Shown: positions 1 through 57,880 of the stretch, piece by piece | Numbering within the stretch: position 1 is the first letter of the stretch | Layout: each line of letters opens with the position of its first letter | Virus record (IMG/VR): IMGVR_UViG_3300033145_003233 | Coordinates: 1 to 64,000 of that record | Length of the DNA stretch: 64,000 nucleotides | Direction: 5' to 3' (one strand) | Program-made: the position numbers and the translations under genes | Notes under the pieces: generated by a model | What the model was told of the DNA's origin: nothing | The model's input: the letters and a program-made list of their open reading frames with translations, nothing else | The model's database searches: none

Positions 1-1293
1 ACAAATAACATTTGTAGGTGTTCCACCTGGAGTATCTAGACTACATAAAATAATATTACCTTCAGGAGCATCTTCCTGACAATAAGCTTTCTTACCATAT
101 GCAGAAACACCTGAAGTTCCTGACGAACCACTGCTACCAGAAGAACCACTACTACCAGATGTGCCAGAAGAACCTGATGTTCCACTACTACCTGAAGACC
201 CACTACTACCTGAAGAACCTGAGCTACCTGACGTTCCGCTACTACCTGAACTTCCAGAAGAACCACTACTACCTGACGAACCAGATGTTCCACTACTTCC
301 AGAGCTGCCTGACGAACCTGAGCTTCCGCTCGCTCCTTGTGCTCCTGACGAACCTGAACTTCCTGATGAACCTGAACTTCCTGAACTACCAGAGGTTCCA
401 CTACTCCCAGATGTGCCTGACGAACCACTACTACCAGAACTTCCACTACTACCCGATGTCCCCGAAGAACCTGAAGAACCGCTATCACCCTGCGCCCCTG
501 AAGAACCACTGCTGCCAGAGGAACCTGAAGAGCCTGAAGAACCGCTATCACCCTGCGCCCCAGAAGAACCACTACTGCCCGAAGAACCTGATGAACCGCT
601 ACTGCCCGATGTTCCTGAACTACCCGAAGAACCCGAACTTCCACTATCTCCTGCTGCCCCAGAAGAACCACTACTTCCCGATGAACCAGAGCTTCCACTA
701 CTACCAGAAGTTCCTGATGTACCTCCCCCACCGCCACCTGCTGAGATAGCAGTATCTGCATAATCTCCCACATACACATAGCAAGTAATTTTAAGACTAG
801 TTACACTAGCAAGTTCTCCAGAGCCAGGAACATGAGTAGTTTGAAGCATAACTATTCCAGCATAATAATCTACATCCCAAACCCCTGTAGTAGGACTAAT
901 TTCAGCATTATTCTGATCATATAATCTTGCCTGATATCCATATGAAGGAGCAGCAGTCGTAGAATGAGGAACATCTGTAGGAGCTATCCATGGTTTAATA
1001 AACACTCCTCCATCGCTCAAATACCAAGCCTCGCCATTACTACCACCTATTTCTGTCAAAGTAGCATGAACATATCTTTTCACAGAAGTAATGCTAGGAC
1101 TACCAGCTAATCCAACAGCCGTAGCTTCATCTACAGCATAATCTACAGTATCAGCCCATACATCACTTGTTCTTAATGAATGCGCAGATTTATACAATGC
1201 CTCATAGTTAGCCTGATTAGCCTCAGTATTAGTCTTGCTAAACGCATGAGCATAAGCTTTAGCTCTTTTAAATGCATCACTAGGTGTTGCCAT
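1..1293 (-). CDS. Virion fibre/structural protein with long Gly-Ser-Ser repeat tract; runs off the left edge (3' partial)
   Basis: Missed by the ORF track. ATG at 1293 (MATPSDAFKRAKAYAH...), open to position 1. About 210 codons of G-S/T-S triplets, then the AYCQEDAPEGNIILCSLDTPGG module shared with the upstream fibre gene. Confidence 0.85.
   Translation of the reverse strand, partial: MATPSDAFKRAKAYAHAFSKTNTEANQANYEALYKSAHSLRTSDVWADTVDYAVDEATAVGLAGSPSITSVKRYVHATLTEIGGSNGEAWYLSDGGVFIKPWIAPTDVPHSTTAAPSYGYQARLYDQNNAEISPTTGVWDVDYYAGIVMLQTTHVPGSGELASVTSLKITCYVYVGDYADTAISAGGGGGGTSGTSGSSGSSGSSGSSGSSGAAGDSGSSGSSGSSGTSGSSGSSGSSGSSGSSGAQGDSGSSGSSGSSGSSGSSGAQGDSGSSGSSGTSGSSGSSGSSGSSGTSGSSGTSGSSGSSGSSGSSGSSGAQGASGSSGSSGSSGSSGTSGSSGSSGSSGSSGSSGTSGSSGSSGSSGSSGSSGTSGSSGTSGSSGSSGSSGSSGTSGVSAYGKKAYCQEDAPEGNIILCSLDTPGGTPTNVIC
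107..735 (-). repeat. In-frame 9-bp-unit repeat coding (Gly-Ser/Thr-Ser)n
   Basis: Degenerate ccactacta/cctgaagaa units, Gly every third codon on the minus strand. Confidence 0.9.
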
Positions 1294-1472: not shown

Positions 1473-4400
1473 TTAACTCCAAGTAGTAATTTCTATTTTA
1501 GCCATTTCTACACTGCTCGCATCGTGCATCGTAATCTTTAACCATATTCCCCATCCTGGCCCAGTTCCAACAGCAGTAAAACCTCCTGTTCCAAGGGTAA
1601 AATCTAAACTAGGCATAGTTGTCCCAGGATTAACCCTACATCCGTCTCCATTATTTAAAGCTCCCCCTCCATATAATTCGTTACAATTATACCAATCAGT
1701 TCCATCTAAACTAATTTCTATAATAACATCATCATCTGTTAAATTTTGTTCTGTAACTCCAGTAATATTAAATGTACCATTAGAATGAGCAGTCCCATTA
1801 TGCCACATCCCCCTATAAAAATATCTGTCATTTGCGAGAGAAGAATAATCTGGTTGACTACCAGAACTAGGTTCATAAGCTCCATAATTTACAGATGGAT
1901 AAAATAATTTTGTTCCCTCCCCCACTTGTAACCCCTGACCATCATCAGCAGAAGCTAAGCTAGCTGTGCTATCCCAAGGAGTAGATAAATCATCCTCTAA
2001 TCTCTCATCTTCACTTGTAAAATCTTCCACAATCGCCGTAGAATTATCATTATAAGTATCTATGATAATGGAAGCATTAGCAGAATTAGTATTAGCTCCA
2101 TATCCACTCCAATCCCGAGTATCTGCATATATATTTGCTGTAGTCGTCATAGTATATAGATTAGAACTGCTGATAGTTAAAGCAGCATTAGAATAAGAAG
2201 CATTAACATTATTATAAACATTCGTCCAACTTGTTAAATCTCCTCCAGTTATACTATCAGTAGATATTCCATACTCAGTACATACTAATCTAGCAAAAGT
2301 AGAAAGATAAGTATCTGAATTCATATAATCTAAATCAGCAATAGCCCCTGTAAAAGTGCTACCAGTATCATAATAATAAACGCCTGACTTACGCAAAATG
2401 ACAGGAGTATTCTCTGCTATAGTTACTCCAGATATTGCTTGAGCATTAGGCTCAAGGTCATAAAAAATATTATTTTGTGTATATGTTTGATCCCCATCTC
2501 CAGCATCATGATGGATAATCTCAACACTAAATCTGCCCGATTGTAAAGTATCAAGTATAGTGTCAATATTAAACGTCACTGTTATAATCCCCTTATATTG
2601 ATCAGTATCTGCTGCCCAACTAGTTACTTCTATTTGAATATTGTCTACTGTGACATCAGTATTCCCTGTAATAGCAGCAGTAGTATGAGTTGCTAAAGTA
2701 CTTACTCCATCAGCATCATATACATTAACTTCTATAGTCGTTGTAGAATTATCTTTAAAACTACATGTATTAGAATTAGAACTATAAACACAACTAGCGA
2801 CAGAAGCCCTGATAGCACTTACTGTATCTCCTCCCGACCAGCTTCCTATATTAAAAGGATTACCTTCACCAGTCGGAGCCGCCACAAGTCTGCTAGTTAC
2901 ATTCTTATCATCCACTCTACAATCATTCGTTCCATTATTATCATCAAAATTAGAGACATAAGATGGAGGAGGAACATACACATTTACTTCCCCACTTACA
3001 CAATCTTTTGCCTGAACTGTAGCTCCTTTAAAATTGATAGTAGTTACATTTCCACAAATTAAACTGCCCTCATCTTCTACATTTAAAGACCATCCTCCAA
3101 AATCATGCCCATGTAAGTCATCAGCATTATTAGAAGGGCCACCAACCAATCCCCAATATTGATCTGTATTTAAATGATAATATTCCCCAACCTCTCCTCC
3201 TTGAATACCCACTAGCTCACTATGATCTATAGTAGTATTAATCCATACCGAACCACTCCATTTTAAATATTCATTTGTTTGAAGGTCTATAAGAGAGACA
3301 TCATATAAATCTGACATATTTAAATAACTAGAAGTAAGATCGAATATAGTTGTGCAATAATAATTACCTCCTATTTCTACAATTGTTATTTCATCTCCAT
3401 CATATAGACGAGGGGTTGCCGCATTTAAATCTTCATCTACTGAAGGGTTACTTCCGACAATCAAACAAATAACATTTGCTGGAGTACCGTCTGGAGTATC
3501 TAAATTACATAAAATAACATTTCCTTCAGAAGCATCTTCCTGACAATAAGCTTTTCTACCAGAACCTGAACCGGAAGTGCCGGAACTACCAGCTGAACCA
3601 GAGCTACCTGAACTACCTGATGAACCTGAGCTACCCGAAGTTCCACTACTTCCTGAGCTACCAGAAGTTCCTGAGCTTCCTGAGCTACCACTACTACCTG
3701 ATGTACCGGAGCTACCACTACTACCTGATGAACCTGAGCTACCACTACTACCTGATGTACCGGAGCTACCACTACTACCTGATGTACCGGAGCTACCACT
3801 ACTACCTGATGTACCGGAGCTACCAGCCTCTCCTCCTCCAAACGGAACTCCATTTCCCCAGTATTCATCACAAACAGAAGGATTTCCTAAAACACTAGGA
3901 TTAGCAGGAGGAGTATCATTCCTAAAATATAATAGTCCATTATCAGTATCTAAAAAACTAAATCCTTCTAGTTCATCTATATAATCACAAAGTTCGTTAA
4001 CAGGGCCTTGTACGTCTACACTAAATGAAACACCATCTTGACCTGAGCTACCGGAGCTACCACTACTACCTGAGCTACCACTACTACCTGAGCTACCAGA
4101 GCTACCACTGCTACCTGATGTCCCTGCCGAAGGAATACTAAATATTGTCGTACAATAGTAAACGCTATTTATTTCTACAACTGTAATTTTATCACCATCA
4201 AACAAACGAGGTATAGCATTATTTAAATCTTCATCTACTGAAGGATTGTTACCTGCTATAAAACAAATAACATTTATAAGTGTTCCACCTGGAGTATCTA
4301 GACTACATAAAATAATATTACCTTCAGAAGCATCTTCCTGACAATAAGCCACAGTGCCGATGCCGCTGCCCGTACCCGAAGTCCCAGAAGAACCAGCACT

Positions 4401-5039
4401 TCCCGATGTCCCACTACTGCCAGCACTTCCACCAGCACCTGTCCCTGAATGAACGTGACAACAATCAGCATTACTACCATCAAGTAATTTTCTAAAATTA
4501 ACTATTATGAAAGGGTCTTCATCATCTATATGTTCTAAAAGAGTGTGTGCTTCATCGTGAGCTTTAGTAACAGTATCCTCAATTGTAGCTCCATCAGAAG
4601 ATACATCTGATAATTGATTAATGCTTCCATCTTTTCTTACATACTCATCTATCTCCAAACCATTAATAGCATTATCTATTCCGGTTTGTAATTCAGAATC
4701 TGTTATAAGAGTAGAATGAGTATGTAAACTATCTGCATCAGAGGAAGGTCCTATCGTTAGAATATCTAATCCGCTATGAGTATGAACCTCTAAAGCCCTA
4801 TCATCATGAGTATGCATATACCCAGTAGTAGATATTCTAGGAGGATCTGTTCCTACTCCAACTAGAAGATTTCTATAAACATCAGAAGCAGCCAACCTCT
4901 CAGGAGTGGTGTAGTCTAATGCTTCAATTGTTTCTCCTGGTTGTATCCACGACATCCCCGGTATATCAAAAATTCTTAATCTAACCGGAGAAACATTGGT
5001 TATTTCCCAAGATTCTCTCGGATGCTGAATGTCCGCCAT
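1473..5039 (-). CDS. Tail fibre-like virion protein, 1188 aa, with GSS repeats, HxH motifs and a twice-repeated ~70-aa module
   Basis: Three G-S-S tracts; HTH/HVH/HGH motifs typical of trimeric metal-binding fibre shafts; beta-rich C-terminal half. Confidence 0.75.
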   Translation of the reverse strand: MADIQHPRESWEITNVSPVRLRIFDIPGMSWIQPGETIEALDYTTPERLAASDVYRNLLVGVGTDPPRISTTGYMHTHDDRALEVHTHSGLDILTIGPSSDADSLHTHSTLITDSELQTGIDNAINGLEIDEYVRKDGSINQLSDVSSDGATIEDTVTKAHDEAHTLLEHIDDEDPFIIVNFRKLLDGSNADCCHVHSGTGAGGSAGSSGTSGSAGSSGTSGTGSGIGTVAYCQEDASEGNIILCSLDTPGGTLINVICFIAGNNPSVDEDLNNAIPRLFDGDKITVVEINSVYYCTTIFSIPSAGTSGSSGSSGSSGSSGSSGSSGSSGSSGQDGVSFSVDVQGPVNELCDYIDELEGFSFLDTDNGLLYFRNDTPPANPSVLGNPSVCDEYWGNGVPFGGGEAGSSGTSGSSGSSGTSGSSGSSGTSGSSGSSGSSGSSGSSGTSGSSGSSGSSGTSGSSGSSGTSGSSGSSGSSGSSGSAGSSGTSGSGSGRKAYCQEDASEGNVILCNLDTPDGTPANVICLIVGSNPSVDEDLNAATPRLYDGDEITIVEIGGNYYCTTIFDLTSSYLNMSDLYDVSLIDLQTNEYLKWSGSVWINTTIDHSELVGIQGGEVGEYYHLNTDQYWGLVGGPSNNADDLHGHDFGGWSLNVEDEGSLICGNVTTINFKGATVQAKDCVSGEVNVYVPPPSYVSNFDDNNGTNDCRVDDKNVTSRLVAAPTGEGNPFNIGSWSGGDTVSAIRASVASCVYSSNSNTCSFKDNSTTTIEVNVYDADGVSTLATHTTAAITGNTDVTVDNIQIEVTSWAADTDQYKGIITVTFNIDTILDTLQSGRFSVEIIHHDAGDGDQTYTQNNIFYDLEPNAQAISGVTIAENTPVILRKSGVYYYDTGSTFTGAIADLDYMNSDTYLSTFARLVCTEYGISTDSITGGDLTSWTNVYNNVNASYSNAALTISSSNLYTMTTTANIYADTRDWSGYGANTNSANASIIIDTYNDNSTAIVEDFTSEDERLEDDLSTPWDSTASLASADDGQGLQVGEGTKLFYPSVNYGAYEPSSGSQPDYSSLANDRYFYRGMWHNGTAHSNGTFNITGVTEQNLTDDDVIIEISLDGTDWYNCNELYGGGALNNGDGCRVNPGTTMPSLDFTLGTGGFTAVGTGPGWGIWLKITMHDASSVEMAKIEITTWS
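3570..3826 (-). repeat. In-frame (Gly-Ser/Thr-Ser)n tract; shorter tracts at about 4040-4125 and 4370-4440
   Basis: Tandem ctgatgtaccggagctaccactactac units within the 1188-aa ORF. Confidence 0.9.
4263..4349. repeat. 87-bp segment nearly identical to 1-87; third, more diverged copy at about 3464-3552
   Basis: Direct comparison: 3 mismatches in 87 nt between 1-87 and 4263-4349. Confidence 0.9.
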
Positions 5040-6790: not shown

Positions 6791-6818
6791 ATTATACCAT
6801 TATTTTTTCACTTTACAA
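6791..6818 (-). promoter_or_regulatory. sigma70-like promoter TTGTAA-AGTGA...TGG-TATAAT
   Basis: Near-copy of the 6673-6700 promoter. Confidence 0.7.
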
Positions 6819-7568
6819 GTTTATTTTTAAAATATTTGACATTTCATTATAAAACCTGATATCATATTTATTCATTTGTCTTAATAACTTACGAACTTTT
6901 TTATCTTTCCATCCAACTCTAGGCTTATTCTTCGAAACATTACTCCTTTTTAGAGATTTTTTCTTCCATCCTAATTTATCACTTAATTTCTTAAAATCAT
7001 TAACATAATTCTCTTGAAAACCTACAAAATAATAATTATTCAAAAGATTGTACTTTGCTGCTTCATAAAATTTCTCCATTTCATCTTCAGAATATTTCTT
7101 TTTCCTTGAAGTGTAAATATATGTATATTTTATTCCTGGCACTCTAATAATATTAGAAAGATCTTCTAATCCCGATAGCATCTTTACCATTACATTACAA
7201 TGCATATCATTTTTTAAAACATAGCTCAAAAAAGAAATTATATTCCCCCTAGCTTTCTTTATCCATAATTCTCTGCGATAAGAGGTATTTGTAGTAAAAA
7301 TAGTTTTATTAAAAAAAGATTTCCATCTTGATATAGGATTTCTTAAAAAAGTAATATATTTAATATCTTTGGTATCTGGAAAATATTTATGACACCCATA
7401 AGCCACATGCCCTACAGCAAATTTATATTTGTCTGGATAAGAAGGAGGAGGATCACTGTATTCTTTCCTATGAAACCTTGTAACGGTTCTCTTTCTGCGA
7501 TATTCTTTATAAGAATATTCTATTAAAGCCCTACCACCTGTCCTCGGTATATGTGTGAAAATTATCAT
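6813..7568 (-). CDS. Sulfotransferase family (Sulfotransfer_2-like) protein
   Basis: 5'-PSB-like IFTHIPRTGG and 3'-PB-like FLRNPISRWKS motifs; terminal DIRFY motif. Confidence 0.75.
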   Translation of the reverse strand: MIIFTHIPRTGGRALIEYSYKEYRRKRTVTRFHRKEYSDPPPSYPDKYKFAVGHVAYGCHKYFPDTKDIKYITFLRNPISRWKSFFNKTIFTTNTSYRRELWIKKARGNIISFLSYVLKNDMHCNVMVKMLSGLEDLSNIIRVPGIKYTYIYTSRKKKYSEDEMEKFYEAAKYNLLNNYYFVGFQENYVNDFKKLSDKLGWKKKSLKRSNVSKNKPRVGWKDKKVRKLLRQMNKYDIRFYNEMSNILKINL

Positions 7569-39326: not shown

Positions 39327-40055
39327 CTAATTATTGTTAGCAACTAATTTACATAACTTAATGAAATAATCTTGGGAATGAATATTCTTCATTTTGTTAA
39401 TATGCTTATGAACCCATTGGACATTGCCCTTCATGTATCCTCTTGTATTGTCAACGCGATCAAGGGAAGCAGTGCATTCCCTTGCTAGTTCTTCTTTTCT
39501 ACTTCTTAACCCTAAATCCAAATTTATTCCGCTTAAAGCACATTTTCTATTTTGTTTTTCAAATAATTTCCACAAATATTTTTTCGTAACTCTAAAACTT
39601 AACTTTCTTCTACTAGCATTAAATTCGAATTTATGAAACAGCCCTCCCGACAAATCTTTATAGCCCTTATAACATGGGTGGTCTTGCCCCACAGGGTTCT
39701 GAAGACAACCACACGATCTATGACTTCCATATTTGAGAGTATGGCTAGTTAATACAATCTCTTTTCCACAATCGCATGAACAACGCCAATAATAACTCCT
39801 TTGACCCCTCTTAGCTCTTTCAAGAACGGTTAAATTACCATATCTTTCACCTATTTTAATATGATCATAAACACAACCACAACTTTGTAAATTATGTTTC
39901 CTAATCACATCAGATCGAAAAACTTTTGTTTCTCCACAATCGCATTCGCAATCCCAATAAGTCCCAGCCCTACTATATTTCTTGGACCTAGATGTCACAA
40001 CTAACTTTCCAAATCTTTTACCTGTTAAATCAATCAATCTCGAACCATTTTTCAT
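39327..40055 (-). mobile_element. HNH-type homing endonuclease with duplicated DLTGKRFGKL..YWxCxCDCG domains
   Basis: Two GxRxGxL/WxCxCDCG repeats; C-terminal SLDRVDNTRGYMKGNVQWVHKHINKMK; downstream of nrdJ. Confidence 0.85.
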
Positions 40056-40142: not shown

Positions 40143-42593
40143 TTAGCACCTCGCCCAGCCGCAGCTTTTGCATGCTACGCAACCTTGTTCTCTAATTAAT
40201 TCTCCACCACATTCTTTACAAACTTCTCCATGTATTTTTGTATCATCAGGAATATATTTTTTCAACACTCTGCTCAATGCCTTAGCAAAACTCATCAAAT
40301 CTCCCTTAACCTTCTCTAACTGATGAACCACGAAGCTAACATCACAACCATGTCTGAGAGAAGCAGATATAAGCCTCGTAATAGCTTCTTGATCTTCATC
40401 TATATGGATTGAAATATCCTCTTGAACAACTTCCCCATTTTCCTCTAGTAAAGAATATTTGCCCCTCTTAATTTTTTTAACAACTCCATATCTAAGAGAT
40501 TTTTTAATGTTCCCATTTTTTCCAGCAAAAATTTCATAAGGATCATCTCCAAGCAATCCGATTATTACAAAATATGAATCTCCCCTAGATATTGTATGAT
40601 AAATATCTACTGGTAATATTTTAGGCCGTTTAGAAGCATTCGTTTTCTTTATAGCAAATTCTCCCTCTTCCTTAGTGTTGTCAACCATCACTCCACTTCT
40701 GCAACCCTTACGATAAACTGTAACTCCTTTACATCCTTCCTTCCAAGCTGCCTCATAAATCTTTGCAACTTCTTCTACTTTTATATCTTGAGGGACATTT
40801 AAAGTGCTAGAAATAGAATGGTCTATATTTTTATTGGCAATAGCTTGCAGCTTAACTCGATTAATCCAATCTATATCATAAGCACAACTGTCATTCCATG
40901 GAGATTTTGTGATATCTGTCTCCCCTGTAATTTCCATCCATTCCTTTACTTTAGGATGTAATATTTCAAATTCTTGCCAACAGTCTCCATTAGCATCTAT
41001 AACATCAATTCTAGTATCTTTATCATTAACATTAATTTTTTTTCTTCTTTTATAACTAATTTGATAACATGGTTCTATCCCAGAAGTGGTCTGGGTAAGA
41101 ATAGAAACTGAACCTGCTGGAGCAGAAGTTAAACAAGATATATTTCTTCTTCCATATTTATTCATCTCACGATACAACTCAGGGTCATCATCTTTTATCC
41201 TTAATAAAAATGGATTGTCTTTTTCTAATTTAGAATCCCACACCTCGAATGGACCTAGCTCTTTAGCCATCTCAACAGAAGATTTATAACAAGCTAATTT
41301 TAATGTTTTAAAAATATCATCTACAACACCTAAACTTTTTTTAGAGCCATATCTGATATTTAGTGCCGCCAAAGTATCTCCCAATGCTGTTGTCCCAGTT
41401 CCAGTTCTTCTTCCCCTAGCACAAATTTTCTTCATATTTTTCCACAAATCCAATTCCGTTCTTTTTATATTTAGAGGTTCAGGATCATTTTTTAATTTTT
41501 TAATTATCCTTTCTATCATTTCCACCTCAATATCAACAAGGTCATCCATAAACCTTTGAGCTATCATTGCATCTGCCCTAAACATGTCAAAATCGAAATA
41601 AGCCTCCTTAGTAAAAGGTTCCCTTACATACCCATAAAGATTAAGCAATAATAAACGACAAGAATCGTATGGGCATAAGGGAATCTCTCCACATGGATTA
41701 GTTGAAGTGGTCTTATAGCCGAACTCTTGATAACAATCAGCTGGGCTTTCTCTAATTATATTATCCCAGAAAAGAAGTCCAGGCTCTGCTGTAGCATGAG
41801 CACTTTTAATAATTTCCATCCATACTTCTTTAGCGTCTACCATTGTAGAAATTTGTTTTTCTCCATCTTTAGCATCTACAGGAAATCTTTGCTCATATTT
41901 TTTTCCCTTTTTTACAGCGTCCAAAAATTCATCTGTCAATCTAATTGAGATATTAGCTCCTGTTATATCATCTGGATTTCTTTTAGACCTAGCAAAATGA
42001 ATCACCTCAGGATGATGAATAGAGATTGTAAGCATTAACGCCCCTCTACGTCCCGATTGCCCCACTTCCCTAATAGAATTACTATATCTTTCCATGAAGG
42101 GAATAATACCAGTACTAGTTCTAGCAGCATTTGTAGTAGCACTTCCATTAGGTCTTAAATTAGAAATATCTGTTCCTACTCCACCTCTCCTTTTAGATAT
42201 TTGTAGAATATGCTCGTCTTCTCTACAAATGCCTCCATAAGAATCAACTGGAGAAGGAATTACATAACAATTTGAAATAGTAACATATTGATAAGGATTC
42301 CCTATCCCTGACATAGGAGATCCTTGCGGAATAATTCTTTTGAAGTCTTTTAGATATTCTATTATTTCTTCGTAAGAAAGGGGCTTTTTGAATTTGTTTT
42401 TTTCTATACGGTGTATCTCAGAAGCAATCCTACGAAACATATCTTCTGGAGTTTGTTCTAACAATTGTTGTTGTTTATTTTTTAAAGCGTATTTATCTAA
42501 AAATACTCTTGCTGAAATTTCTTCCCCTTTGAAATATTCCATGCTCTTTTTTAAAGCATCAGAATACTCGTACACTTCCCCACCCTCTGTCAT
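40143..42593 (-). CDS. nrdJ: Class II (adenosylcobalamin-dependent) ribonucleotide reductase
   Basis: SNC, RRGA, NPCGEIPL, SAPAGS..SGIEP, GCKGVTVYR; C-terminal Zn ribbon. Confidence 0.92.
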   Translation of the reverse strand: MTEGGEVYEYSDALKKSMEYFKGEEISARVFLDKYALKNKQQQLLEQTPEDMFRRIASEIHRIEKNKFKKPLSYEEIIEYLKDFKRIIPQGSPMSGIGNPYQYVTISNCYVIPSPVDSYGGICREDEHILQISKRRGGVGTDISNLRPNGSATTNAARTSTGIIPFMERYSNSIREVGQSGRRGALMLTISIHHPEVIHFARSKRNPDDITGANISIRLTDEFLDAVKKGKKYEQRFPVDAKDGEKQISTMVDAKEVWMEIIKSAHATAEPGLLFWDNIIRESPADCYQEFGYKTTSTNPCGEIPLCPYDSCRLLLLNLYGYVREPFTKEAYFDFDMFRADAMIAQRFMDDLVDIEVEMIERIIKKLKNDPEPLNIKRTELDLWKNMKKICARGRRTGTGTTALGDTLAALNIRYGSKKSLGVVDDIFKTLKLACYKSSVEMAKELGPFEVWDSKLEKDNPFLLRIKDDDPELYREMNKYGRRNISCLTSAPAGSVSILTQTTSGIEPCYQISYKRRKKINVNDKDTRIDVIDANGDCWQEFEILHPKVKEWMEITGETDITKSPWNDSCAYDIDWINRVKLQAIANKNIDHSISSTLNVPQDIKVEEVAKIYEAAWKEGCKGVTVYRKGCRSGVMVDNTKEEGEFAIKKTNASKRPKILPVDIYHTISRGDSYFVIIGLLGDDPYEIFAGKNGNIKKSLRYGVVKKIKRGKYSLLEENGEVVQEDISIHIDEDQEAITRLISASLRHGCDVSFVVHQLEKVKGDLMSFAKALSRVLKKYIPDDTKIHGEVCKECGGELIREQGCVACKSCGWARC

Positions 42594-42665: not shown

Positions 42666-43376
42666 TTATAATAAAATTCCTTCTAATTCTTCCCTCGTAT
42701 ATTTTTTTTCTCCACACATCTCTATAGCCTCTTCTAAGGTATGTTTCGGAAAAACTTTATTATTTGAGCAATTGATAATTGTCTTATTTTTACTGTTATC
42801 TCTTATAAATTTCAGACCCTTAACACAGGCAGGAAGGGTATGTGGCCTGTGCATAGCATTATTTCCATAAAAATCTGTCTCTTTCTTCTTCCCATATTTA
42901 CAGTCCATCCCCACCAAAACGATAGGATTGCATCTTAAGGTATAAGCAAATTGGTATGTAATAGTTCCACTACTCCCCCTGCCATAAAGAACGGTAGTAT
43001 TAGGGGGTAAACGAGGTTCTCTCCCTCCTAGTTTAAATGAATAAAACCCCCCTTGAGTTTCAGATCCTTCTCTACAATATTTTATCGCCCTGGTCTTAAG
43101 AACCTTCTTTTTTTCCTGTAACCACAATGCTAAATCTTGCCATATCAAAATAGTCGGATCGTATTTAAAAAAAATTCTATTCATCCCTATTGTGAAATAA
43201 TCATTCAACAAGGATAAATTAACATTATTAAGAGAAGGAGCATTCCCGAGTAAAAAAACGGGAATGTCCTTCATTTTACCTGTCCAATTTAAAGGATTTA
43301 AAGGCTTAACTCTTGCTCTTCGTTGCTTAGTCCTTATATTCCTTCTCATCCAACTTGGCCTATAAACTTTTCCCAT
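42666..43376 (-). CDS. Maf/DUF115 (MptE-like fold) glycosyltransferase-like protein
   Basis: LLGNAPSLN...TIGMNRI...SGTITYQFAY..RCNPIVLVGMDC. Confidence 0.65.
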   Translation of the reverse strand: MGKVYRPSWMRRNIRTKQRRARVKPLNPLNWTGKMKDIPVFLLGNAPSLNNVNLSLLNDYFTIGMNRIFFKYDPTILIWQDLALWLQEKKKVLKTRAIKYCREGSETQGGFYSFKLGGREPRLPPNTTVLYGRGSSGTITYQFAYTLRCNPIVLVGMDCKYGKKKETDFYGNNAMHRPHTLPACVKGLKFIRDNSKNKTIINCSNNKVFPKHTLEEAIEMCGEKKYTREELEGILL

Positions 43377-43918
43377 GAAGATGGAATCTTCAACTTAGGG
43401 TCGAATAACAACTGCTTATCGCTTGGTTTTCCAGGTTTCTTAATCAACTTTAGACCAGCTTCCTGAGGAGTTTTATTTCCTTTAGCTCTATTAAGATCTC
43501 TTGAACAAACAACCATATTCTCCCAAGAATTCTTTCCTCCTCTTGAACGAGGAACAACATGGTCAATGTCCGCATTTTTATGATTAACCTGTTTACCAGT
43601 ATATTGACATTGATATCCATCCCTGATATAAAGATTTCTCTTAGTTAATCTTAGAGATTTTCTATGCACCTTATCATAATTTAGTAGAACGACCACCTCT
43701 GGAATCTTTATATCACCCTGAGTAGTCGTTATGCCTTCTTCTTCCTCTGCTACGGGCAAAGAGGCCCATTTCTCCCAATTATGAATAGAATAGTCGCTGG
43801 GCAGCACTATAGATGCCTTGTCTGCAAAGATTAATTTGAGACATCTTTTTACAGAGGCTACTCTAATTGGAATCCACATTTTGTTAAGAACCAACACTGG
43901 TTTTGCCAAAGAAGACAT
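43346..43918 (-). CDS. HNH endonuclease (HNH_5 type)
   Basis: VLVLN...RDGYQCQY...IDHVVPRSRGG..SWENMV....N..KGNKTP. Confidence 0.92.
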   Translation of the reverse strand: MSSLAKPVLVLNKMWIPIRVASVKRCLKLIFADKASIVLPSDYSIHNWEKWASLPVAEEEEGITTTQGDIKIPEVVVLLNYDKVHRKSLRLTKRNLYIRDGYQCQYTGKQVNHKNADIDHVVPRSRGGKNSWENMVVCSRDLNRAKGNKTPQEAGLKLIKKPGKPSDKQLLFDPKLKIPSSWEKFIGQVG

Positions 43919-43920
43919 AA

Positions 43921-44421
43921 TTACTCCTTTTTCAATAAAGACACTTCATTTATAAACTCTTCATTCTCATCAATAATTTTTAACTCAATTTTTTCTTTAA
44001 ACTTATAACAAGCTTCCATTGTAGCTCTAGCTACACTTTTTTTATCAAGACCTCCTGGTTCAATGCCAAGGCCACATATAGTTGCTGTCTCTATATTATC
44101 GGCAACTATAGCACTCAAAGTATTATCTAATGCTCTCTCTACTATATAAATAGAACTGAAATCACTTTGTAATCTTTTTATTACAGCATGATAAATTCTT
44201 TTAAGTCCTCTTCGATTTAACCTACCTGATCCTGTACAAAAACATTCTCCTAATTCTATTTCATTATCTAAAGCAAAAGCCCTTGCTTCTTTAGAAATAC
44301 CAGTTAGCCCATCTTTTACAATCTTAGCTGCTCTGCCTCTCCCCATCACCCCCATTGCATTAGCTGGTATAATAAGAGCTTCGGACTTAGGATAGCAGAT
44401 ATTTCCCAATATTATTTTCAT
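43921..44421 (-). CDS. Macro domain protein (ADP-ribose binding/hydrolase), divergent
   Basis: ALIIPAN..GVMGRG.A; GEC.CTGSG.L; IYHAV; CGLGIEPGG. Confidence 0.8.
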   Translation of the reverse strand: MKIILGNICYPKSEALIIPANAMGVMGRGRAAKIVKDGLTGISKEARAFALDNEIELGECFCTGSGRLNRRGLKRIYHAVIKRLQSDFSSIYIVERALDNTLSAIVADNIETATICGLGIEPGGLDKKSVARATMEACYKFKEKIELKIIDENEEFINEVSLLKKE

Positions 44422-44613: not shown

Positions 44614-45459
44614 TTAAAATAAAGGATCATTGTTATTACACCTCTCTATGTACCCTGAAATGTCTTTTCCAAAGAAAACAGGGTTTCTCTCTATTTTATC
44701 CCTTAATCTGGGAAGAATAGCTGTATGGAGTTGGCTTATCCTAGATTCTGACATGTTTAGTTTTCTAGCAATATCTTCCATTGTTAGATTTTCATAATAA
44801 TAGTAATATATAATCTTTTGCTCCATTCTTGTAAAGCTCTTACTCATTAACTTGTTGAGAAATTCCTTTCTTAGTAAAGTACTATCAGGAGTCTTTGTTT
44901 TTTTATCTTCTATATCTCCCAAAGAATCCTGCTTGAAATTCTCCTGCTTTTCCTTACCACAAATATCTGATCCCTCTAAACTGATAAAGCTTATTGGTTT
45001 ATACTTTTTGATATTTTTAAGATATTCTGTTTGATTTATACCTAATTTTTCCACAACTTCATAATCTGTAACTTTCCCTCCTTTAGTATTTTCCATCTCG
45101 GACTTCATTTTTTCAAGAAGATTATTATTAATCCTTACACTTCTTGGTATAATATCTTCTTTTCTGATACCATCTATCATAGAACCTCCTATCCTACGAT
45201 TAGCATAAGTAGGGAAATCTACTCCAGCATCTAGACAAAATCTATCTATAGCCGAATATAGACCATCTATTCCTAAACTAGTAAGTTCTTCTGGTAGGAC
45301 TTTCCACCTTAAATTCTTTGCAAATTTATAAGATATTTTTTGAACTAATGGGTAATATATCTCTATTAATTCGTTTTTAAGGTTCCCTTTTTTCTTTTCA
45401 TTTTTTTCTTTTTTAAATCTGATCCACAAATCCAAGTTGTGTATTTTCTGCTTTTCCAT
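44614..45459 (-). CDS. RNA polymerase sigma factor, FliA/WhiG (sigma28)-like
   Basis: Region 2 EL..LG..GL..AIDRF....F.TYA..RI.G.MID.IRK; region 4 LTMEDIA..LNMSESRISQLH. Confidence 0.9.
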   Translation of the reverse strand: MEKQKIHNLDLWIRFKKEKNEKKKGNLKNELIEIYYPLVQKISYKFAKNLRWKVLPEELTSLGIDGLYSAIDRFCLDAGVDFPTYANRRIGGSMIDGIRKEDIIPRSVRINNNLLEKMKSEMENTKGGKVTDYEVVEKLGINQTEYLKNIKKYKPISFISLEGSDICGKEKQENFKQDSLGDIEDKKTKTPDSTLLRKEFLNKLMSKSFTRMEQKIIYYYYYENLTMEDIARKLNMSESRISQLHTAILPRLRDKIERNPVFFGKDISGYIERCNNNDPLF

Positions 45460-45641: not shown

Positions 45642-46994
45642 ATGAAGAGAATTATCAATAGCATATTAGATAACGATTTATACAAATTTACCATGCAACA
45701 AGCGGCCCTTGAGTTGTTTCCTAATGCAGAAGTTACATACGCATTTAAAAATAGGGGAGATCAAAGATTCACTCCTGAATTTATAACAGAACTCAAAAGC
45801 CAAATATCTAGAATGATTGATATTAAGTTAACCCCTGATGAATACTTTTGGTTAAAAAACAATATATCCTTCTATAAACCTCAATATCTGGAATATTTAG
45901 CAAATTACAGATTTAATCCAGGAGAAGTAGACGTTATTTTAAATGATAATAATGATTTAGTTCTAAATATCAGTGGGAAATGGCATACTACAATCCTATG
46001 GGAAGTTCCTCTGATCGCTCTGATTAGTGAATTATATTTCAAGATGATAGATACAGAGTGGAAAGGGGAAACAATTATGCAGAGAAAATGTTTCCCAGAT
46101 GACTGGTATGGAGATTTGGGTCTTACATGGGAAGATGCCCCAAAGAGATGGGACAAAACAGATCAAAGGGAAAATGCCTTTATAAAAATAAGAGAGATGC
46201 AAAAAAATCAATGTGGTTTCGCTGATTTCGGAACTCGCAGAAGAAGAAGCTTTGAGAACCAAGACAAAATAATTAAAGCTTTCATGGATTTTCAGAAAGG
46301 AATACAAGATAGAATTGTTCTTCCTGATGAGATAGATGAATTCAAACCTTCTCCAGATAATGGGTTCCCATTCGTTGGAACTAGCAATCTTTATTTTGCT
46401 ATGAAGTATGGATTAAAACCCATAGGAACTATGGCCCACGAATGGATTATGGCAATGGCTATTTTGGAAGGATTATACAACTCTAATTACTATGCCCTTC
46501 AAAACTGGGTAAGAGTTTATAACTCTGATTTAGGAATCGCCCTTACAGATACTTATGGTCTACAAACTTTTCTCCGCAATTTTAATATTAGATTAGCAAA
46601 ATTATATGACGGAGTAAGGCATGACAGTGGATGTCCCTTTAATTTCGCAGACGCGATTATTTCTTATTACAATAGTCTCAATATAGATCCAACTTCTAAG
46701 ACTATTGTATTTAGCGATGGTTTAAATATAGAAAATGCCATCCAAATTAAAAAACATTGTACTGACAAATGGGATAAACCAAGAATTAAATGTTCCTTCG
46801 GCATTGGAACACATTTGACAAACGATCTTGATGGGAGCAAGGCTCTTAATATCGTGATTAAACTATTTTCTTGTGAAGGAATCCCTGTCGTAAAATTAAG
46901 CGATGTAGAAGGTAAGGTAATGGGAGATCCTGATGCTGTAAGAGTAGCCAAGTGGATGTTCCAAAAAAGACCCTTAGATTGGAAACATAGATAA
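45642..46994 (+). CDS. pncB: Nicotinate phosphoribosyltransferase
   Basis: LDNDLYKFTMQQ, DFGTRRR, GTSN, GTMAHEW, LTDTYG, GVRHDSG, VFSDGL, FGIGT, KLSD. Confidence 0.95.
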   Translation: MKRIINSILDNDLYKFTMQQAALELFPNAEVTYAFKNRGDQRFTPEFITELKSQISRMIDIKLTPDEYFWLKNNISFYKPQYLEYLANYRFNPGEVDVILNDNNDLVLNISGKWHTTILWEVPLIALISELYFKMIDTEWKGETIMQRKCFPDDWYGDLGLTWEDAPKRWDKTDQRENAFIKIREMQKNQCGFADFGTRRRRSFENQDKIIKAFMDFQKGIQDRIVLPDEIDEFKPSPDNGFPFVGTSNLYFAMKYGLKPIGTMAHEWIMAMAILEGLYNSNYYALQNWVRVYNSDLGIALTDTYGLQTFLRNFNIRLAKLYDGVRHDSGCPFNFADAIISYYNSLNIDPTSKTIVFSDGLNIENAIQIKKHCTDKWDKPRIKCSFGIGTHLTNDLDGSKALNIVIKLFSCEGIPVVKLSDVEGKVMGDPDAVRVAKWMFQKRPLDWKHR

Positions 46995-47041
46995 TGATTA
47001 AAGAAACTTTAGAACAGATATTTAAAAGGAGAAATAAAACA

Positions 47042-47350: not shown

Positions 47351-47351
47351 A

Positions 47352-47564: not shown

Positions 47565-47577
47565 AGAAAAAACAACC

Positions 47578-47799: not shown

Positions 47800-47808
47800 G
47801 AGACAACT

Positions 47809-48042: not shown

Positions 48043-48048
48043 GAAATT

Positions 48049-50351: not shown

Positions 50352-50363
50352 AGGGATGCTAGG

Positions 50364-55427: not shown

Positions 55428-57880
55428 CTAGATTATAAGTTCTTCTACTAGTGTCCCATTGACAACTATTTGAAGACTTCCTTCTTCCGCTATATATTCT
55501 ATATAAACATCTTCATCTTCTCCCTCAATAGAAGAACTGCTGGAGCTTACAGAGCTGCTTGAGCTTACGGAACTACTTGAGCTACTCACAGATGAGCTAC
55601 TTGAACTTACCGAGCTACTTGAACTTGAAACTGATGAACTACTAACAGATGAACTGCTCGAACTTGAAACAGACGAACTGCTTACTAAACTACTACTTGA
55701 GCTTATAGAACTAGAGCTTACAGAACTAGAGCTTACAGAACTAGAGCTACTGCTAACCGAAGAACTACTAACTGAACTACTGCTTGAGCTTATAGAACTA
55801 GAGCTTACAGAACTAGAGCTACTACTAACCGAAGAACTACTAACGGAAGAACTGCTTGAACTTATTGAGCTACTAGAGCTGCTATCTTCTGCTACACTAC
55901 TACTACTTGAACTTACTGAACTACTTGAACTTGAAACCGAAGAACTACTAACAGATGAGCTGCTTGAGCTTACTGAACTACTTGAGCTTGAAACTGATGA
56001 GCTACTAACAGATGAGCTGCTTGAACTTACTGAACTACTTGAGCTTGAAACTGATGAGCTACTAACAGATGAGCTACTTGAACTTACTGAACTACTTGAG
56101 CTTGAAACTGATGAGCTACTAACAGATGAGCTACTTGAGCTTACTGAACTACTTGAGCTTGAAACTGATGAGCTACTAACAGATGAGCTACTTGAGCTTA
56201 CTGAACTACTTGAGCTTGAAACTGAAGAACTACTAACTGAACTACTGCTAGAGCTTACAGAACTAGAGCTTACAGAACTAGAGCTGCTACTAACCGAAGA
56301 ACTACTAACTGAAGAACTGCTTGAGCTTATTGAACTACTAGAGCTGCTATCTTCTGCTGCGCTACTGACCGAAGAACTACTTACTGAACTGCTGCTAGAA
56401 CTTACCGAACTACTTAAGCTTGAAACTGACGAACTACTTACTGAACTGCTGCTAGAACTTACCGAACTACTTGAGCTTGAAACTGATGAGCTACTTACTG
56501 AACTAGAGCTTGAACTTATAGAGCTAGAACTTACAGAACTAGAGCTTACAGAACTAGAGCTGCTACTAACCGAAGAACTACTAACTGAAGAACTGCTTGA
56601 GCTTATTGAACTACTAGAGCTGCTATCTTCTGCTGCGCTACTGAAGAACTGCTTACTGAACTACTTGAACTACTAATTGATGAGCTACTTACAGAGCTGC
56701 TAGAACTTGAAACTGACGAACTGCTTACTGAACTACTAGAACTTGAAACTGACGAACTGCTTACTGACGAACTGCTTGAGCTTACTGAACTACTTGAACT
56801 TGAAACTGACGAACTGCTTACTGAGCTACTAGAACTTGAAACTGACGAGCTGCTTACCGAACTACTGCTTGAACTTACTGAGCTACTTGAGCTTGAGACT
56901 GATGAACTGCTAACAGATGAACTGCTAGAGCTTACTGAACTACTTGAGCTTGAGACTGATGAACTACTTATAGAAGAACTTGAGCTTGAGACTGATGAAC
57001 TACTTACAGAAGAACTTGAGCTTGAGACTGATGAACTACTTACAGAAGAACTTGAGCTTGAGACTGATGAACTACTTATAGAAGAACTTGAGCTTGAGAC
57101 TGATGAACTACTTACTGATGAACTGCTAGAACTTACTGAACTACTGCTGACAGATGAGCTACTAGAACTTACTGAACTACTAGAGCTTGAAATTGATGAA
57201 CTGCTTGATGATCCCTCCGGCAATATTTCAAGAAGATGACCACAATTTTCGTCACTAAAACCACCAGCCCAGTCAATTATTATTGAATCAGGTGCCCCGC
57301 CTATTTTATCTCCGACATAGAAACTTTCATCTTGAGAAGTAGAACCTCCTCCAGTCTCACCATTAGCGATTTGAAAAAATCCAGCACCTCCTGTAGTAAC
57401 AGGAGATCCATCTGCTCCATAAGCACAAGCCACTGCAAATAATGTACTTCCTGTTGTTGCCGAGCCAGATGGCAGAACAGTTGTTGTTGTAAGACTATTA
57501 TTTACATCTTCACTGAGAAAATTAGTAGCATCGGCTACTGAGCTATTAATCGTTCCAAGATAATTAACTGCCGTGGAATGAGTATGGGCATCAGTAGTTT
57601 GTGTAAAAGTAATATTAGCGATTCCGGGAGAGGGATTAACTCGCCCATAAGTAGTGATTTTTTTATCTCCGCCACTAGAAGTGTCATTTGTAGTAGCATC
57701 AATAATAGAAAGAGTCTCAGTTGTATTCCCTGCAGGTGCAATACTAATACTCTCATTAGCATCCTGAGTAACAGTGACAACAAGGAGAGTCGTCCCTTCA
57801 TCAACCTCATGCACATAAGTTATCTCACTTGCATTATCGGTCAATGTATATGTTGTATATTGTCCTCTAGTTATTGCCAT
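55428..57880 (-). CDS. Giant poly-Ser virion/adhesin-like protein interrupted by one frameshift near 56642 (about 818 codons if restored)
   Basis: ORF 56603-57880 drifts out of frame. The Ser frame continues without stops in the segments checked to ...SIEGEDEDVYIEYIAEEGSLQIVVNGTLVEELII* at 55428. Confidence 0.75.
55530..57211 (-). repeat. About 560-codon low-complexity (S4-7-V/I)n tract with three S-A/V-A-E-D punctuation units
   Basis: Hierarchical gagctact/gaactact repeats; AED units near 55885, 56350 and 56628. Confidence 0.92.

What the first reader, a model, noticed from the sequence alone, without database searches (positions are those of the whole stretch)
42666..43376. Possible virion O-glycosylation/sulfation kit: Maf-like transferase, sulfotransferase and three huge Ser-rich acceptors
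Seen: a Maf/DUF115-like gene here, a sulfotransferase (6813-7568), about 560 codons of poly-Ser (55530-57211) and two GSS fibres. Known: Maf proteins transfer nonulosonic acids (pseudaminic/legionaminic) to Ser/Thr of flagellins; sulfotransferases use PAPS. Inference: the phage builds mucin-like, anionic glyco-fibres for shielding, adhesion or receptor mimicry.
Basis: partly seen in the sequence, partly recalled or inferred. Interest (0 to 1): 0.6.

Follow-up and report, generated by a model that had tools for sequence, protein, structure and literature searches.

The report
Phage mini-Maf sugar transferase gene
A 548-kb bacteriophage carries a small, strongly conserved enzyme that looks like the bacterial enzymes that attach sialic-acid-like sugars to proteins, and the same genome encodes the sugar donors, sulfotransferases and serine-rich fibres that would let it build a mucin-like coat, but nothing yet shows what this particular enzyme modifies.

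Summary
ORF 42666-43376(-) is a real gene; its start is probably ATG 43349, giving 227 aa. It has more than 150 close homologues. It encodes a single-domain MptE-like/DUF115 protein. Its AlphaFold model (pLDDT 93) matches the catalytic domain of the Maf flagellin glycosyltransferase (Z 17.0), well ahead of archaeal MptE kinase (11.2) and sialyltransferases (9-10). A family profile aligns to CstII donor-site motifs (E 8.5e-5).

The window's 6813-7568 gene is a carbohydrate-type sulfotransferase (Z 15.8 to heparan 2-O-sulfotransferase). The poly-Ser gene and two Gly-Ser-Ser collagen-like fibres exist.

The genome beyond the window supports a glycosylation kit much more strongly. It holds a 312-400 kb glycan island with KdsB, three more CMP-sugar synthetases, three NeuB synthases, about eight MptE-like genes, two more sulfotransferases and many glycosyltransferases. 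No polytopic membrane proteins were found.

The target itself is not next to any acceptor. In every relative it sits in a tight macro(DarG-like)-HNH-target cassette upstream of RNR, dUTPase and terminase.

Verdict: probably a CMP-ulosonic-acid transferase, not a pterin kinase.

The parts
42666..43376 (-). Target gene: a single-domain Maf/GT42-like (MptE-like superfamily) transferase. The probable true start is ATG 43349 (227 aa). The N-terminal ~35 residues are basic and modelled at low confidence.
43346..43918 (-). Conserved 190-aa HNH nuclease. Its stop codon overlaps the target's start as ATGA. It is always the gene immediately upstream of the target in relatives.
   Evidence: Pfam HNH_4, phrog_16726, synteny, overlap.
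43921..44421 (-). Macro-domain protein (DarG-like), 2 nt upstream of the HNH gene. It is the first gene of the tight three-gene cassette.
   Evidence: Pfam Macro 37.9 bits; PADLOC DarG E 2e-9.
44614..45459 (-). Phage sigma-70 family factor, the conserved upstream neighbour of the cassette.
40143..42593 (-). Ribonucleotide reductase, the conserved downstream neighbour. It follows a 72-nt gap that holds a promoter-like site.
6813..7568 (-). Carbohydrate-type PAPS sulfotransferase, one of three in the genome.
   Evidence: Pfam 21.8 bits against a cut-off of 22; 22.1 with neighbouring stretches; PAPS-binding motifs; fold Z 15.8 to heparan sulfate 2-O-sulfotransferase.
1473..5039 (-). 1188-aa fibre protein with three collagen-like (Gly-Ser-Ser / Gly-Thr-Ser)n blocks. 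It is a candidate acceptor.
   Evidence: Pfam Collagen 51.6 bits; PHROG tail-fibre families; sequence.
1..1293 (-). Second GSS collagen-like fibre gene, cut by the contig start. Similar modules lie at the other contig end.
56603..57880 (-). Poly-Ser protein, first part: a 228-aa globular N-domain followed by (SSSSSSV / SSSSV)n.
55428..56660 (-). Continuation of the poly-Ser tract in the -1 frame, ending in a short acidic C-terminal segment. The frame change is either an assembly error or real.

Best explanation
The gene encodes a soluble, single-domain glycosyltransferase of the Maf / GT42-sialyltransferase type. It is essentially the catalytic domain of a Maf protein without Maf's two flanking domains.

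It most likely takes a CMP-activated ulosonic acid and transfers it in the host cytoplasm to a phage-specified acceptor. The donor would be Kdo or a nine-carbon nonulosonic acid. The phage activates Kdo with its own KdsB, and encodes its own NeuB-type synthases and three further CMP-sugar synthetases for the nonulosonic acids.

**Shown:**
- the fold
- the conserved donor-site motifs
- strong purifying conservation, and the fixed position in a macro-HNH-X cassette
- donor-pathway genes, sulfotransferases and Ser-rich fibre genes in the same genome

**Inferred:**
- the donor class
- that the enzyme acts on a virion component. This could be a Ser/Thr side chain, as for Maf, or a sugar of a glycan already on the protein, as for CstII.
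- that the product contributes to a glycosylated, partly sulfated fibre coat
For: **Family and fold.**
- phrog_4603 sialyltransferase, E 1e-9 over residues 44-220.
- AlphaFold2 model pLDDT 93.3.
- In an exhaustive structure search, the Maf central domain (5mu5) scores Z 17.0, rmsd 3.0 over 194 residues. MjHPPK scores 11.2 and sialyltransferases 8.6-9.3.

**Donor-site motifs.** The profile of 55 diverse relatives hits CstII at E 8.5e-5. It aligns GN(G/A)PSL, the invariant N66 with CstII N51, R133-G-S-S-G with CstII R129-I-T-S-G, and G-M-D with G-I-D. These positions are invariant in the close family.

**Glycan association of relatives.**
- Distant relatives are fused to GT2, GT4, FkbM methyltransferase and epimerase domains.
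- A 41%-identical paralogue ends a sugar-nucleotide gene array.
- Another paralogue is flanked by KdsB and a sulfotransferase.

**Donors in the genome.** There are four cytidylyltransferases. One is a KdsB scoring above NCBIfam cut-offs and three are PseF-like. There are three NeuB-family synthases.

**Cytoplasmic glycosylation.** No ORF of 100 aa or more has more than four TM-like segments, so the phage has no flippase, polymerase or WecA-type proteins. This fits direct cytoplasmic glycosylation.

**Distribution.** Look-alikes are almost all viral.
Against: - The Pfam score is below the gathering threshold and covers only 37 residues.
- The catalytic base could not be mapped, because the CstII alignment stops at the GxD motif. 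H176 is invariant only in the close family.
- The MptE kinase and thiamin pyrophosphokinases share the fold (Z 11 and 7-9).
- The gene is about 270 kb from the donor genes.
- Its fixed neighbours are DNA- or nucleotide-directed: a DarG-like macro domain, HNH, RNR and dUTPase. They are not glycan or fibre genes.
- Co-occurrence with donor genes in relatives could not be tested, because all relatives are fragments.
- No biochemical data exist for any stand-alone viral member.
Confidence: 0.55

Rival explanations
1. One reading: this enzyme is the Maf-like O-glycosyltransferase that puts nonulosonic acids directly on Ser/Thr of the poly-Ser and GSS collagen-like fibres. Sulfation then makes them mucin-like.
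For: - The best fold match is Maf, a Ser/Thr O-transferase.
- Ser-rich proteins are abundant in the genome.
- The gene lies in the same long minus-strand array as the terminase, portal, protease, fibres and sulfotransferase.
- A poly-Ser gene lies 6 bp upstream of an MptE-like candidate at 530 kb.
- The phage encodes no membrane-bound glycan export machinery.
Against: - The protein lacks Maf's N- and C-terminal domains.
- It is not adjacent to any Ser-rich gene.
- The 530-kb neighbour is a different paralogue with weak family scores (Pfam 15.2 bits; hhalign E 1e-3, probability 22%).
- Relatives of the poly-Ser protein's N-domain carry other tails, so the tract could be just a flexible spacer.
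- The target is a lineage-wide core gene, whereas Ser-rich genes were not seen in the 10-kb flanks of any relative.
Confidence: 0.22
2. A sialyltransferase-like chain-capping or chain-extending enzyme. The acceptor is a sugar of an oligosaccharide built by the phage's other glycosyltransferases, as for CstII or WaaZ, rather than an amino acid.
For: - The only significant sequence-level match to a solved protein is CstII.
- There is a weak NCBIfam hit to the WaaZ Kdo-III transferase (E 1e-3).
- The minimal single-domain architecture resembles GT42.
- The genome has many GT2, GT4 and GT9 genes that could build the underlying glycan.
Against: - The structural match to Maf is much stronger than the match to CstII (Z 17 against 10).
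- There is no Pfam CST-I hit.
- The acceptor type cannot be read from the sequence.
Confidence: 0.2
3. A host-envelope modifier. The enzyme adds Kdo or a nonulosonic acid to host LPS or capsule precursors during infection, to block superinfection or the re-adsorption of progeny. The basic N-terminal tail would attach it to the membrane.
For: - The phage has KdsB without KdsA, which implies a host that makes Kdo.
- It has GT9 heptosyltransferase-like domains.
- The protein has a basic, disordered N-terminus.
Against: - The phage encodes no lipid-carrier, flippase or ligase functions.
- Glycosyltransferase and methyltransferase genes are interleaved with fibre genes.
Confidence: 0.08
4. Not a glycan enzyme. 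As part of the macro-HNH-X cassette, it acts on a nucleotide or nucleic acid. It could be a pyrophosphokinase of the MptE / thiamin-pyrophosphokinase type, or a transferase onto DNA or RNA. This includes the narrow case of a true pterin kinase.
For: - The gene is invariably linked to a DarG-like macro domain and an HNH nuclease, with translational coupling.
- RNR, dUTPase and NAD-salvage genes are its neighbours.
- The fold is shared with pyrophosphokinases.
- The basic N-terminal tail could bind nucleic acid.
Against: - The Maf match exceeds the kinase matches by about 6 Z units.
- CstII carboxylate- and CMP-site equivalents are conserved.
- Relatives are fused only to glycan enzymes.
- The phage has no thymidylate-synthase-type hydroxymethylase and no DHPS.
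- No PADLOC family matches the protein.
Confidence: 0.07

Closest known systems
Maf (motility accessory factor) flagellin nonulosonic-acid O-glycosyltransferases, e.g. Magnetospirillum magneticum Maf (PDB 5mu5) and Clostridium botulinum CbMaf (PMC11339370)
   Same: It is the best structural match (Z 17.0, 194 residues). The protein shares the central MptE-like catalytic domain. CMP-nonulosonic acid and Kdo donors are plausible because the pathway genes are in the same genome. Like Maf, it would act in the cytoplasm as a soluble enzyme.
   Different: The protein is 227-236 aa, against about 630 aa for Maf, and has no N-terminal Rossmann-like or C-terminal helical domain. The phage has no flagellin. 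Sequence identity is 11%. It is viral and sits in a macro-HNH cassette.
CAZy GT42 sialyltransferases CstII / Cst-I of Campylobacter jejuni (PDB 1ro7, 2p2v)
   Same: The profile match is E 8.5e-5, with aligned GNGPSL, N51, R129-x-T-S-G and G-x-D motifs. Both are single-domain proteins of similar size. The PHROG family of the target is annotated as a sialyltransferase.
   Different: The structural Z is only about 10. There is no Pfam CST-I hit. The CstII lid region and His188 have no alignable counterpart. CstII acts on lipo-oligosaccharide sugars.
MptE, archaeal 6-hydroxymethyl-7,8-dihydropterin pyrophosphokinase (PDB 8sd5), which gives Pfam PF01973 its name
   Same: They belong to the same superfamily fold (Z 11.2) and share the N-terminal glycine-rich loop.
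   Different: MptE is a kinase, not a transferase. The phage has no pterin-pathway context. Relatives of the target are fused to glycosyltransferases, and the Pfam score is below threshold.
Virion glycosylation in mycobacteriophages (Freeman et al. 2023, PMC10527164, as cited in PMC12619734) and fibril glycosylation in giant viruses such as Mimivirus (own knowledge)
   Same: These are virus-encoded glycosyltransferases that decorate structural proteins in the cytoplasm. Giant viruses carry whole sugar-nucleotide pathways, and ChoanoV1 has DUF115 look-alikes.
   Different: Here the predicted sugars are ulosonic acids with sulfation. The candidate acceptors are poly-Ser and collagen-like tracts. 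The scale (about 90 kb) is that of a giant virus rather than a phage. None of this has been verified experimentally.
Serine-rich repeat glycoproteins (GspB/Fap1) and the collagen-like BclA of Bacillus spores (own knowledge)
   Same: Both have long Ser-rich or Gly-X-Thr/Ser repeats that are heavily O-glycosylated by dedicated cytoplasmic glycosyltransferases to form a surface nap.
   Different: Those systems use GT4-type enzymes and hexoses, HexNAc or rhamnose. They are bacterial and are exported by dedicated routes.

Membership tests
MptE-like / DUF115 superfamily (Pfam PF01973) | Scores at or above the Pfam gathering threshold | tested here: not met
   32.2 bits against 34.6, matching profile positions 134-170 only. 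The six-frame search gave 24.2 bits.
MptE-like / DUF115 superfamily (Pfam PF01973) | Fold of solved members (Maf central domain, MjHPPK) | tested here: met
   Z 17.0 to 5mu5 and Z 11.2-11.4 to 8sd5; these are the top two of 48,161 chains.
Maf flagellin glycosyltransferases | Three-domain architecture (N-terminal Rossmann-like, central catalytic, C-terminal helical; about 600 aa) | tested here: not met
   The protein is 236 aa and the model is a single domain. The match covers 5mu5 residues 258-526 only.
Maf flagellin glycosyltransferases | Flagellin acceptor, with the gene in a flagellar glycosylation island | tested here: not met
   No Flagellin_N match in the 548-kb genome. The neighbours are macro, HNH and RNR.
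Maf flagellin glycosyltransferases | CMP-nonulosonic acid (or CMP-Kdo) donor pathway in the same genome | tested here: met
   Four CTP_transf_3 genes, including a KdsB scoring above cut-off, and three NeuB-family genes.
Maf flagellin glycosyltransferases | O-linkage of the sugar to Ser/Thr | not testable with these tools
   This needs enzymology or glycoproteomics.
GT42 sialyltransferases (CstII/Cst-I) | Conserved CMP-sugar binding motifs (GNGPS loop, Asn51, Arg129-x-Thr-Ser-Gly, Gly-x-Asp) | tested here: met
   The family profile A3 aligns to 1ro7 residues 3-156 at E 8.5e-5. The equivalents G44-N45-x-P47-S48, N66, R133, S136-G137 and G156-x-D158 are invariant or nearly so.
GT42 sialyltransferases (CstII/Cst-I) | Catalytic His188 and phosphate-binding Tyr156/Tyr162 (residue roles from own knowledge of the CstII literature) | tested here: inconclusive
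   The alignment ends at the GxD motif. Y170 and H176 are invariant in the close family but could not be placed in register.
GT42 sialyltransferases (CstII/Cst-I) | Match to the Pfam CST-I model | tested here: not met
   Pfam returned no family other than MptE-like at E<=0.1.
MptE pterin pyrophosphokinase (functional family) | Pterin/folate pathway context, i.e. a consumer of the product | tested here: not met
   No Pterin_bind (DHPS) gene in the genome. Fused relatives carry GT2, GT4, FkbM and epimerase domains.
MptE pterin pyrophosphokinase (functional family) | ATP-dependent pyrophosphoryl transfer | not testable with these tools
   This needs an enzyme assay.
Sulfotransfer_2 carbohydrate sulfotransferases (gene 6813-7568) | Pfam threshold, PAPS-binding 5'-PSB and 3'-PB motifs, and sulfotransferase fold | tested here: met
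   The Pfam score is 21.8 bits against a cut-off of 22, or 22.1 with neighbouring stretches. The motifs H-I-P-R-T-G-G and F-L-R-x-P-x-x-R-x-x-S are conserved in ten homologues. The fold gives Z 15.8 and 14.5 to heparan sulfate 2-O- and 6-O-sulfotransferases, and all top 50 rows are sulfotransferases.
Collagen-like triple-helix repeat proteins (1-1293, 1473-5039) | Uninterrupted Gly-X-Y repeats | tested here: met
   Pfam Collagen 51.6 bits in three stretches. The repeats G-S-S and G-T-S can be read directly from the sequence.

The most novel reading that the evidence does not exclude
The lineage-wide, translationally coupled cassette of a DarG-like macro domain, an HNH nuclease and the mini-Maf could be a nucleic-acid-directed module. 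The Maf-like enzyme would put an ulosonic acid, or another nucleotide-activated group, on phage DNA or RNA, or on a nucleotide. The macro and HNH partners would remove competing ADP-ribose marks and cut unmodified DNA. This would be a new kind of nucleic-acid glycosylation chemistry. The evidence weakens this reading: there is no hydroxymethylase, the CstII-like carboxylate site is conserved, and the only fusions are to glycan enzymes. It does not exclude it.
Probability: 0.05. Interest if true: 0.9.

Novelty: new variant of a known kind. Interest (0 to 1): 0.6.

Why it matters
If the enzyme and its paralogues do what the sequence suggests, this 548-kb phage makes its own sialic-acid-like and Kdo donors. 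It would then build sulfated, acidic glycans on serine-rich and collagen-like fibres. That is a bacteriophage counterpart of the glycosylated fibrils of giant viruses, and a far larger kit than the two-glycosyltransferase systems of mycobacteriophages.

My literature searches found no paper linking huge phages to nonulosonic acids or Maf-like enzymes.

Stand-alone MptE-like proteins are common in uncultured phages and some giant viruses, and none has been characterised. Assigning a function to one member would therefore annotate thousands of genes.

A minimal 227-aa Maf-type catalytic domain would also be a useful tool for glyco-engineering, for example O-sialylation of proteins.

Tried and rejected
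- **Complex prediction.** HNH plus target gave score 0.01 against a mark of 0.32. This is no answer and is not evidence either way.
- **INPHARED.** No DNA match for window 30-50 kb. No tblastn match for the target or for the 530-kb paralogue. The nearest TerL is an uncultured 485-kb phage at 26% identity.
- **PDB sequence searches.** The close-family profile A1 found nothing relevant. Only the broadened profile A3 reached CstII. The 530-kb paralogue alone found nothing.
- **Co-occurrence in relatives.** IMG/VR holds only four fragments of 24-90 kb, the three searched being 5-19% complete. 'Relatives' cannot be drawn for a virus record. Three more distant homologues lie on 1-2 kb contigs.
- **Sequencing runs.** None was listed, so expression timing is unknown.
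- **Literature.** No open paper on the MjHPPK/MptE active site was found. The jumbo-phage comparative paper does not mention these families.
- **Contig ends.** Joining the contig end to its start does not close the cut GSS gene; a stop follows after 3 codons.
- **Atlas fold library.** It was unavailable.
- **Rejected ideas.**
  - T4-like DNA glycosylation on hydroxymethyl bases: no thymidylate-synthase homologue.
  - Phage-made PAPS: no APS kinase.
  - Phage-made Kdo-8-P: no KdsA.
  - ORF 12200-17806 as a GSS fibre: it has a prohead-protease-like N-terminus and an acidic scaffold-like body.
Full report
**1. What is at the coordinates**

ORF 42666-43376 on the minus strand encodes 236 aa. The database copy from the same 547,943-bp contig starts at the second Met and is 227 aa. 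That ATG (43349-43347) overlaps the stop codon of the upstream HNH gene as ATGA, so 43349 is probably the true start.

The gene is real and strongly constrained.
- The word search found 156 homologues at 50-85% identity, many on contigs of 90-180 kb.
- In an alignment of 42 of them, 40 columns are invariant.
- An exhaustive HMM search found 2299 representative clusters at E<=1e-3, and 73 at E<=1e-30. Most are stand-alone proteins of 200-280 aa.
- Look-alike clusters in the ESM Atlas are 88-100% viral.
- BFVD lists many uncharacterised proteins from uncultured Caudovirales, plus DUF115 proteins of a giant virus.

**2. What kind of protein it is**

Family scans gave three hits.
- Pfam gives only a sub-threshold MptE-like hit: 32.2 bits against 34.6, covering 37 residues.
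- PHROGs places residues 44-220 in phrog_4603, annotated alpha-2,3-sialyltransferase (E 1e-9).
- NCBIfam gives a weak hit to the Kdo-III transferase WaaZ (E 1e-3).

The AlphaFold2 model is confident (pLDDT 93.3, pTM 0.87) except for the basic N-terminal ~20 residues.

Against all 48,161 PDB representatives, the central catalytic domain of the Maf flagellin glycosyltransferase is first:

| Match | Z |
|---|---|
| Maf, 5mu5 (rmsd 3.0, 194 residues) | 17.0 |
| M. jannaschii MptE/HPPK | 11.2 |
| Sialyltransferases ST8SiaIII and Cst-I | 9.3 and 8.6 |
| SteA | 9.1 |
| Thiamin pyrophosphokinases | 6-7.6 |

The close-family profile finds nothing in PDB by sequence. A profile of 55 diverse relatives hits CstII at E 8.5e-5. 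It aligns the GN(G/A)PSL loop, N66 with CstII N51, R133-G-S-S-G with R129-I-T-S-G, and G-M-D with G-I-D. With the same profile MptE scores E 7e-3 and Maf E 0.12, both on the N-terminal loop only.

Distant relatives occur as domains of large proteins, together with GT2, GT4, FkbM methyltransferase and NAD-epimerase domains.

Taken together, this is a nucleotide-sugar transferase of the Maf/GT42 kind, not a pterin kinase. The phage has no DHPS.

**3. Immediate context**

On the minus strand the gene order is:
- sigma-70 factor (45459-44614), then a 192-nt gap
- macro domain (44421-43921), then a 2-nt gap
- HNH (43918-43346), then the ATGA overlap
- the target, then a 72-nt gap
- RNR (42593-40143)
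- a homing-type HNH
- a 282-aa ORF
- dUTPase
- two unknown ORFs
- large terminase (35537-33639)
- further down: portal (21243-18958), a giant protease/scaffold protein, the sulfotransferase and the GSS fibres

The block NAPRTase | sigma, macro, HNH (always 189-190 aa), target, RNR, dUTPase is the same in five other phages. One of them has a target only about 46% identical.

The macro domain resembles that of DarG (PADLOC E 2e-9), and the HNH is generic. Promoter-like sites lie before the macro gene and before RNR. No minus-strand terminator-like site was found.

The target is therefore a core gene of this lineage, in a tight three-gene cassette. The cassette's other members act on ADP-ribose and DNA, not on glycans.

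**4. The rest of the genome changes the picture**

The window is bases 1-64000 of a single 547,943-bp virus record.

Between about 312 and 400 kb there is an uninterrupted, almost entirely minus-strand array of about 100 genes. It includes:
- four cytidylyltransferases: the one at 331.6 kb is KdsB, scoring above NCBIfam cut-offs, and the others are PseF-like
- three NeuB-family synthases
- five GT4-type and four GT2 glycosyltransferases
- GDP-mannose-dehydratase-like enzymes and epimerases
- many methyltransferases
- radical-SAM enzymes
- dTDP-sugar enzymes
- two more Sulfotransfer_2 genes

About eight ORFs give MptE-like hits.
- One at 332.4 kb lies between KdsB and a sulfotransferase.
- One at 312.2 kb is 41% identical to the target and closes a sugar-nucleotide array. 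In a poorly resolved quick tree it falls in a different clade from the target, so it is not a recent duplicate.

The phage has no KdsA and no APS kinase. Kdo-8-P and PAPS must therefore come from the host, which suggests a Gram-negative host.

A crude hydropathy scan found no ORF of 100 aa or more with more than four TM-like segments anywhere in the genome. The phage therefore has no flippase, polymerase or WecA-like proteins. This favours direct cytoplasmic glycosylation of proteins over export of a polysaccharide.

**5. The Ser-rich proteins**

- ORFs 1-1293 and 1473-5039 carry long collagen-like (G-S-S / G-T-S)n blocks (Pfam Collagen and PHROG tail-fibre families). The first is cut by the contig start.
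- Similar modules sit at the other contig end, but the two ends do not join in frame.
- The poly-Ser gene has a 228-aa globular N-domain. Its few relatives are secreted or phage fibre-like proteins with other tails.
- Its tail is 588 aa and 78% Ser, and is interrupted by one -1 frame change near 56.6 kb.
- At 528-548 kb there are more such genes: a 277-aa protein that is 58% Ser, and two LamG-domain fibre proteins with poly-Ser segments.
- These are interleaved with GT9+GT4+methyltransferase giants and an FkbM methyltransferase.
- The 58%-Ser gene ends 6 bp before an ORF with weak MptE-like and CstII-like features (Pfam 15.2 bits; hhalign E 1e-3, probability 22%).

From my own knowledge, poly-Ser tracts can also be simple flexible linkers. 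Glycosylation of these proteins is an inference.

**6. The sulfotransferase**

The Pfam score is borderline. The protein and nine homologues conserve the two PAPS-binding motifs. The model (pLDDT 79.6) matches heparan sulfate 2-O- and 6-O-sulfotransferases at Z 15.8 and 14.5. Every one of the top 50 rows is a sulfotransferase.

**7. Most likely mechanism**

I give 0.55 to this account: the target is a soluble CMP-ulosonic-acid transferase that uses phage-made CMP-Kdo or a CMP-nonulosonic acid on a phage-specified acceptor.

Within that account, I cannot separate two cases:
- a CstII-like sugar acceptor (about 0.2)

Host-envelope modification is less likely (about 0.08). A non-glycan role in the macro-HNH cassette is also less likely (about 0.07), and this includes the pterin-kinase case.

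**8. Membership**

The protein works like Maf and GT42 enzymes, but it should not be filed as a Maf protein. The three-domain architecture and the flagellin association were both tested and not met. It is a viral, single-domain branch of the MptE-like superfamily.

**9. Novelty**

Virus-encoded virion glycosylation is known in mycobacteriophages (PMC10527164, cited in PMC12619734) and, from my own knowledge, in giant viruses. Maf and CstII chemistry is known (PMC11339370).

New here is the combination in a phage of the following:
- a minimal Maf-type enzyme family with about eight copies
- several ulosonic-acid donor pathways
- carbohydrate sulfotransferases
- poly-Ser and collagen-like fibres

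My searches found no paper describing this.

**10. Limits**

- There are no complete relatives, no expression data, and no residue-level structural superposition.
- The catalytic base is unassigned.
- The link between this gene and any acceptor is unproven.
- All reading was done with genetic code 11.
- The frame change in the poly-Ser gene was only read through conceptually, to count composition.

Noticed in passing
G000:C1:312000-400000 (outside the window; loci L008-L011, L028): There is a glycan-biosynthesis island of about 90 kb, almost all on one strand. It holds KdsB, three PseF-like cytidylyltransferases, three NeuB synthases, GT2, GT4 and GT9 enzymes, FkbM and other methyltransferases, radical-SAM enzymes, E1-dehydrogenase/transketolase-like genes, two sulfotransferases and intein-splicing hits.
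   Followed up: partly
window 56603-56660: The poly-Ser gene changes frame (-1) just before the first A-E-D-S repeat boundary. This is either an assembly error in a highly repetitive region or a real or programmed frameshift.
   Followed up: partly
window 1-1293 and G000:C1:545900-547943: Both contig ends lie inside near-identical GSS collagen-like modules. Joining the end to the start gives a stop after 3 codons, so the assembly probably broke in this repeat family even though the record is rated 100% complete.
   Followed up: partly
window 43921-44421 and 45642-53252: A DarG-like macro domain sits beside a NAD-salvage block (NAPRTase, NAD synthase), a DFP/CoaB-like protein and a methyltransferase. 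The arrangement is conserved in relatives and may be a counter-defence or NAD-replenishing module.
   Followed up: partly
window 18958-21243: The portal protein (phrog_16240) carries an extra HNH-like domain at residues ~585-726.
   Followed up: no
window 39327-40055 and 9782-10549: There are two homing-type endonuclease genes. An HNH lies between RNR and dUTPase; it is absent at that position in L001 and L002, while L024 has an ORF there with a similar N-terminus. A LAGLIDADG gene with a MerR-like tail is the second.
   Followed up: partly
window 12200-17806: This 1868-aa protein has a prohead-protease-like N-terminus (phrog_2774, phrog_18299) and a long acidic, Gly/Met/Pro-rich body. It is probably a giant protease/scaffold fusion.
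   Followed up: no
L025:10745-14497: The RNR of one relative is 1250 aa, against 816-826 aa elsewhere. It probably carries an intein.
   Followed up: no
G000:C1:530206-531747 (L027:2206-3747): A 277-aa protein that is 58% Ser is followed after 6 bp by a 233-aa ORF with weak MptE/CstII-like motifs. This is the only Ser-rich / transferase-like gene pair that is directly adjacent.
   Followed up: partly
window 5948-6586: A VWA-domain protein lies between the GSS fibre gene and the sulfotransferase.
   Followed up: no
whole genome G000: KdsB is present, but KdsA and APS kinase are absent, and no polytopic membrane proteins were detected. The phage appears to depend on a Kdo- and PAPS-producing host (probably Gram-negative) and to glycosylate in the cytoplasm.
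   Followed up: partly
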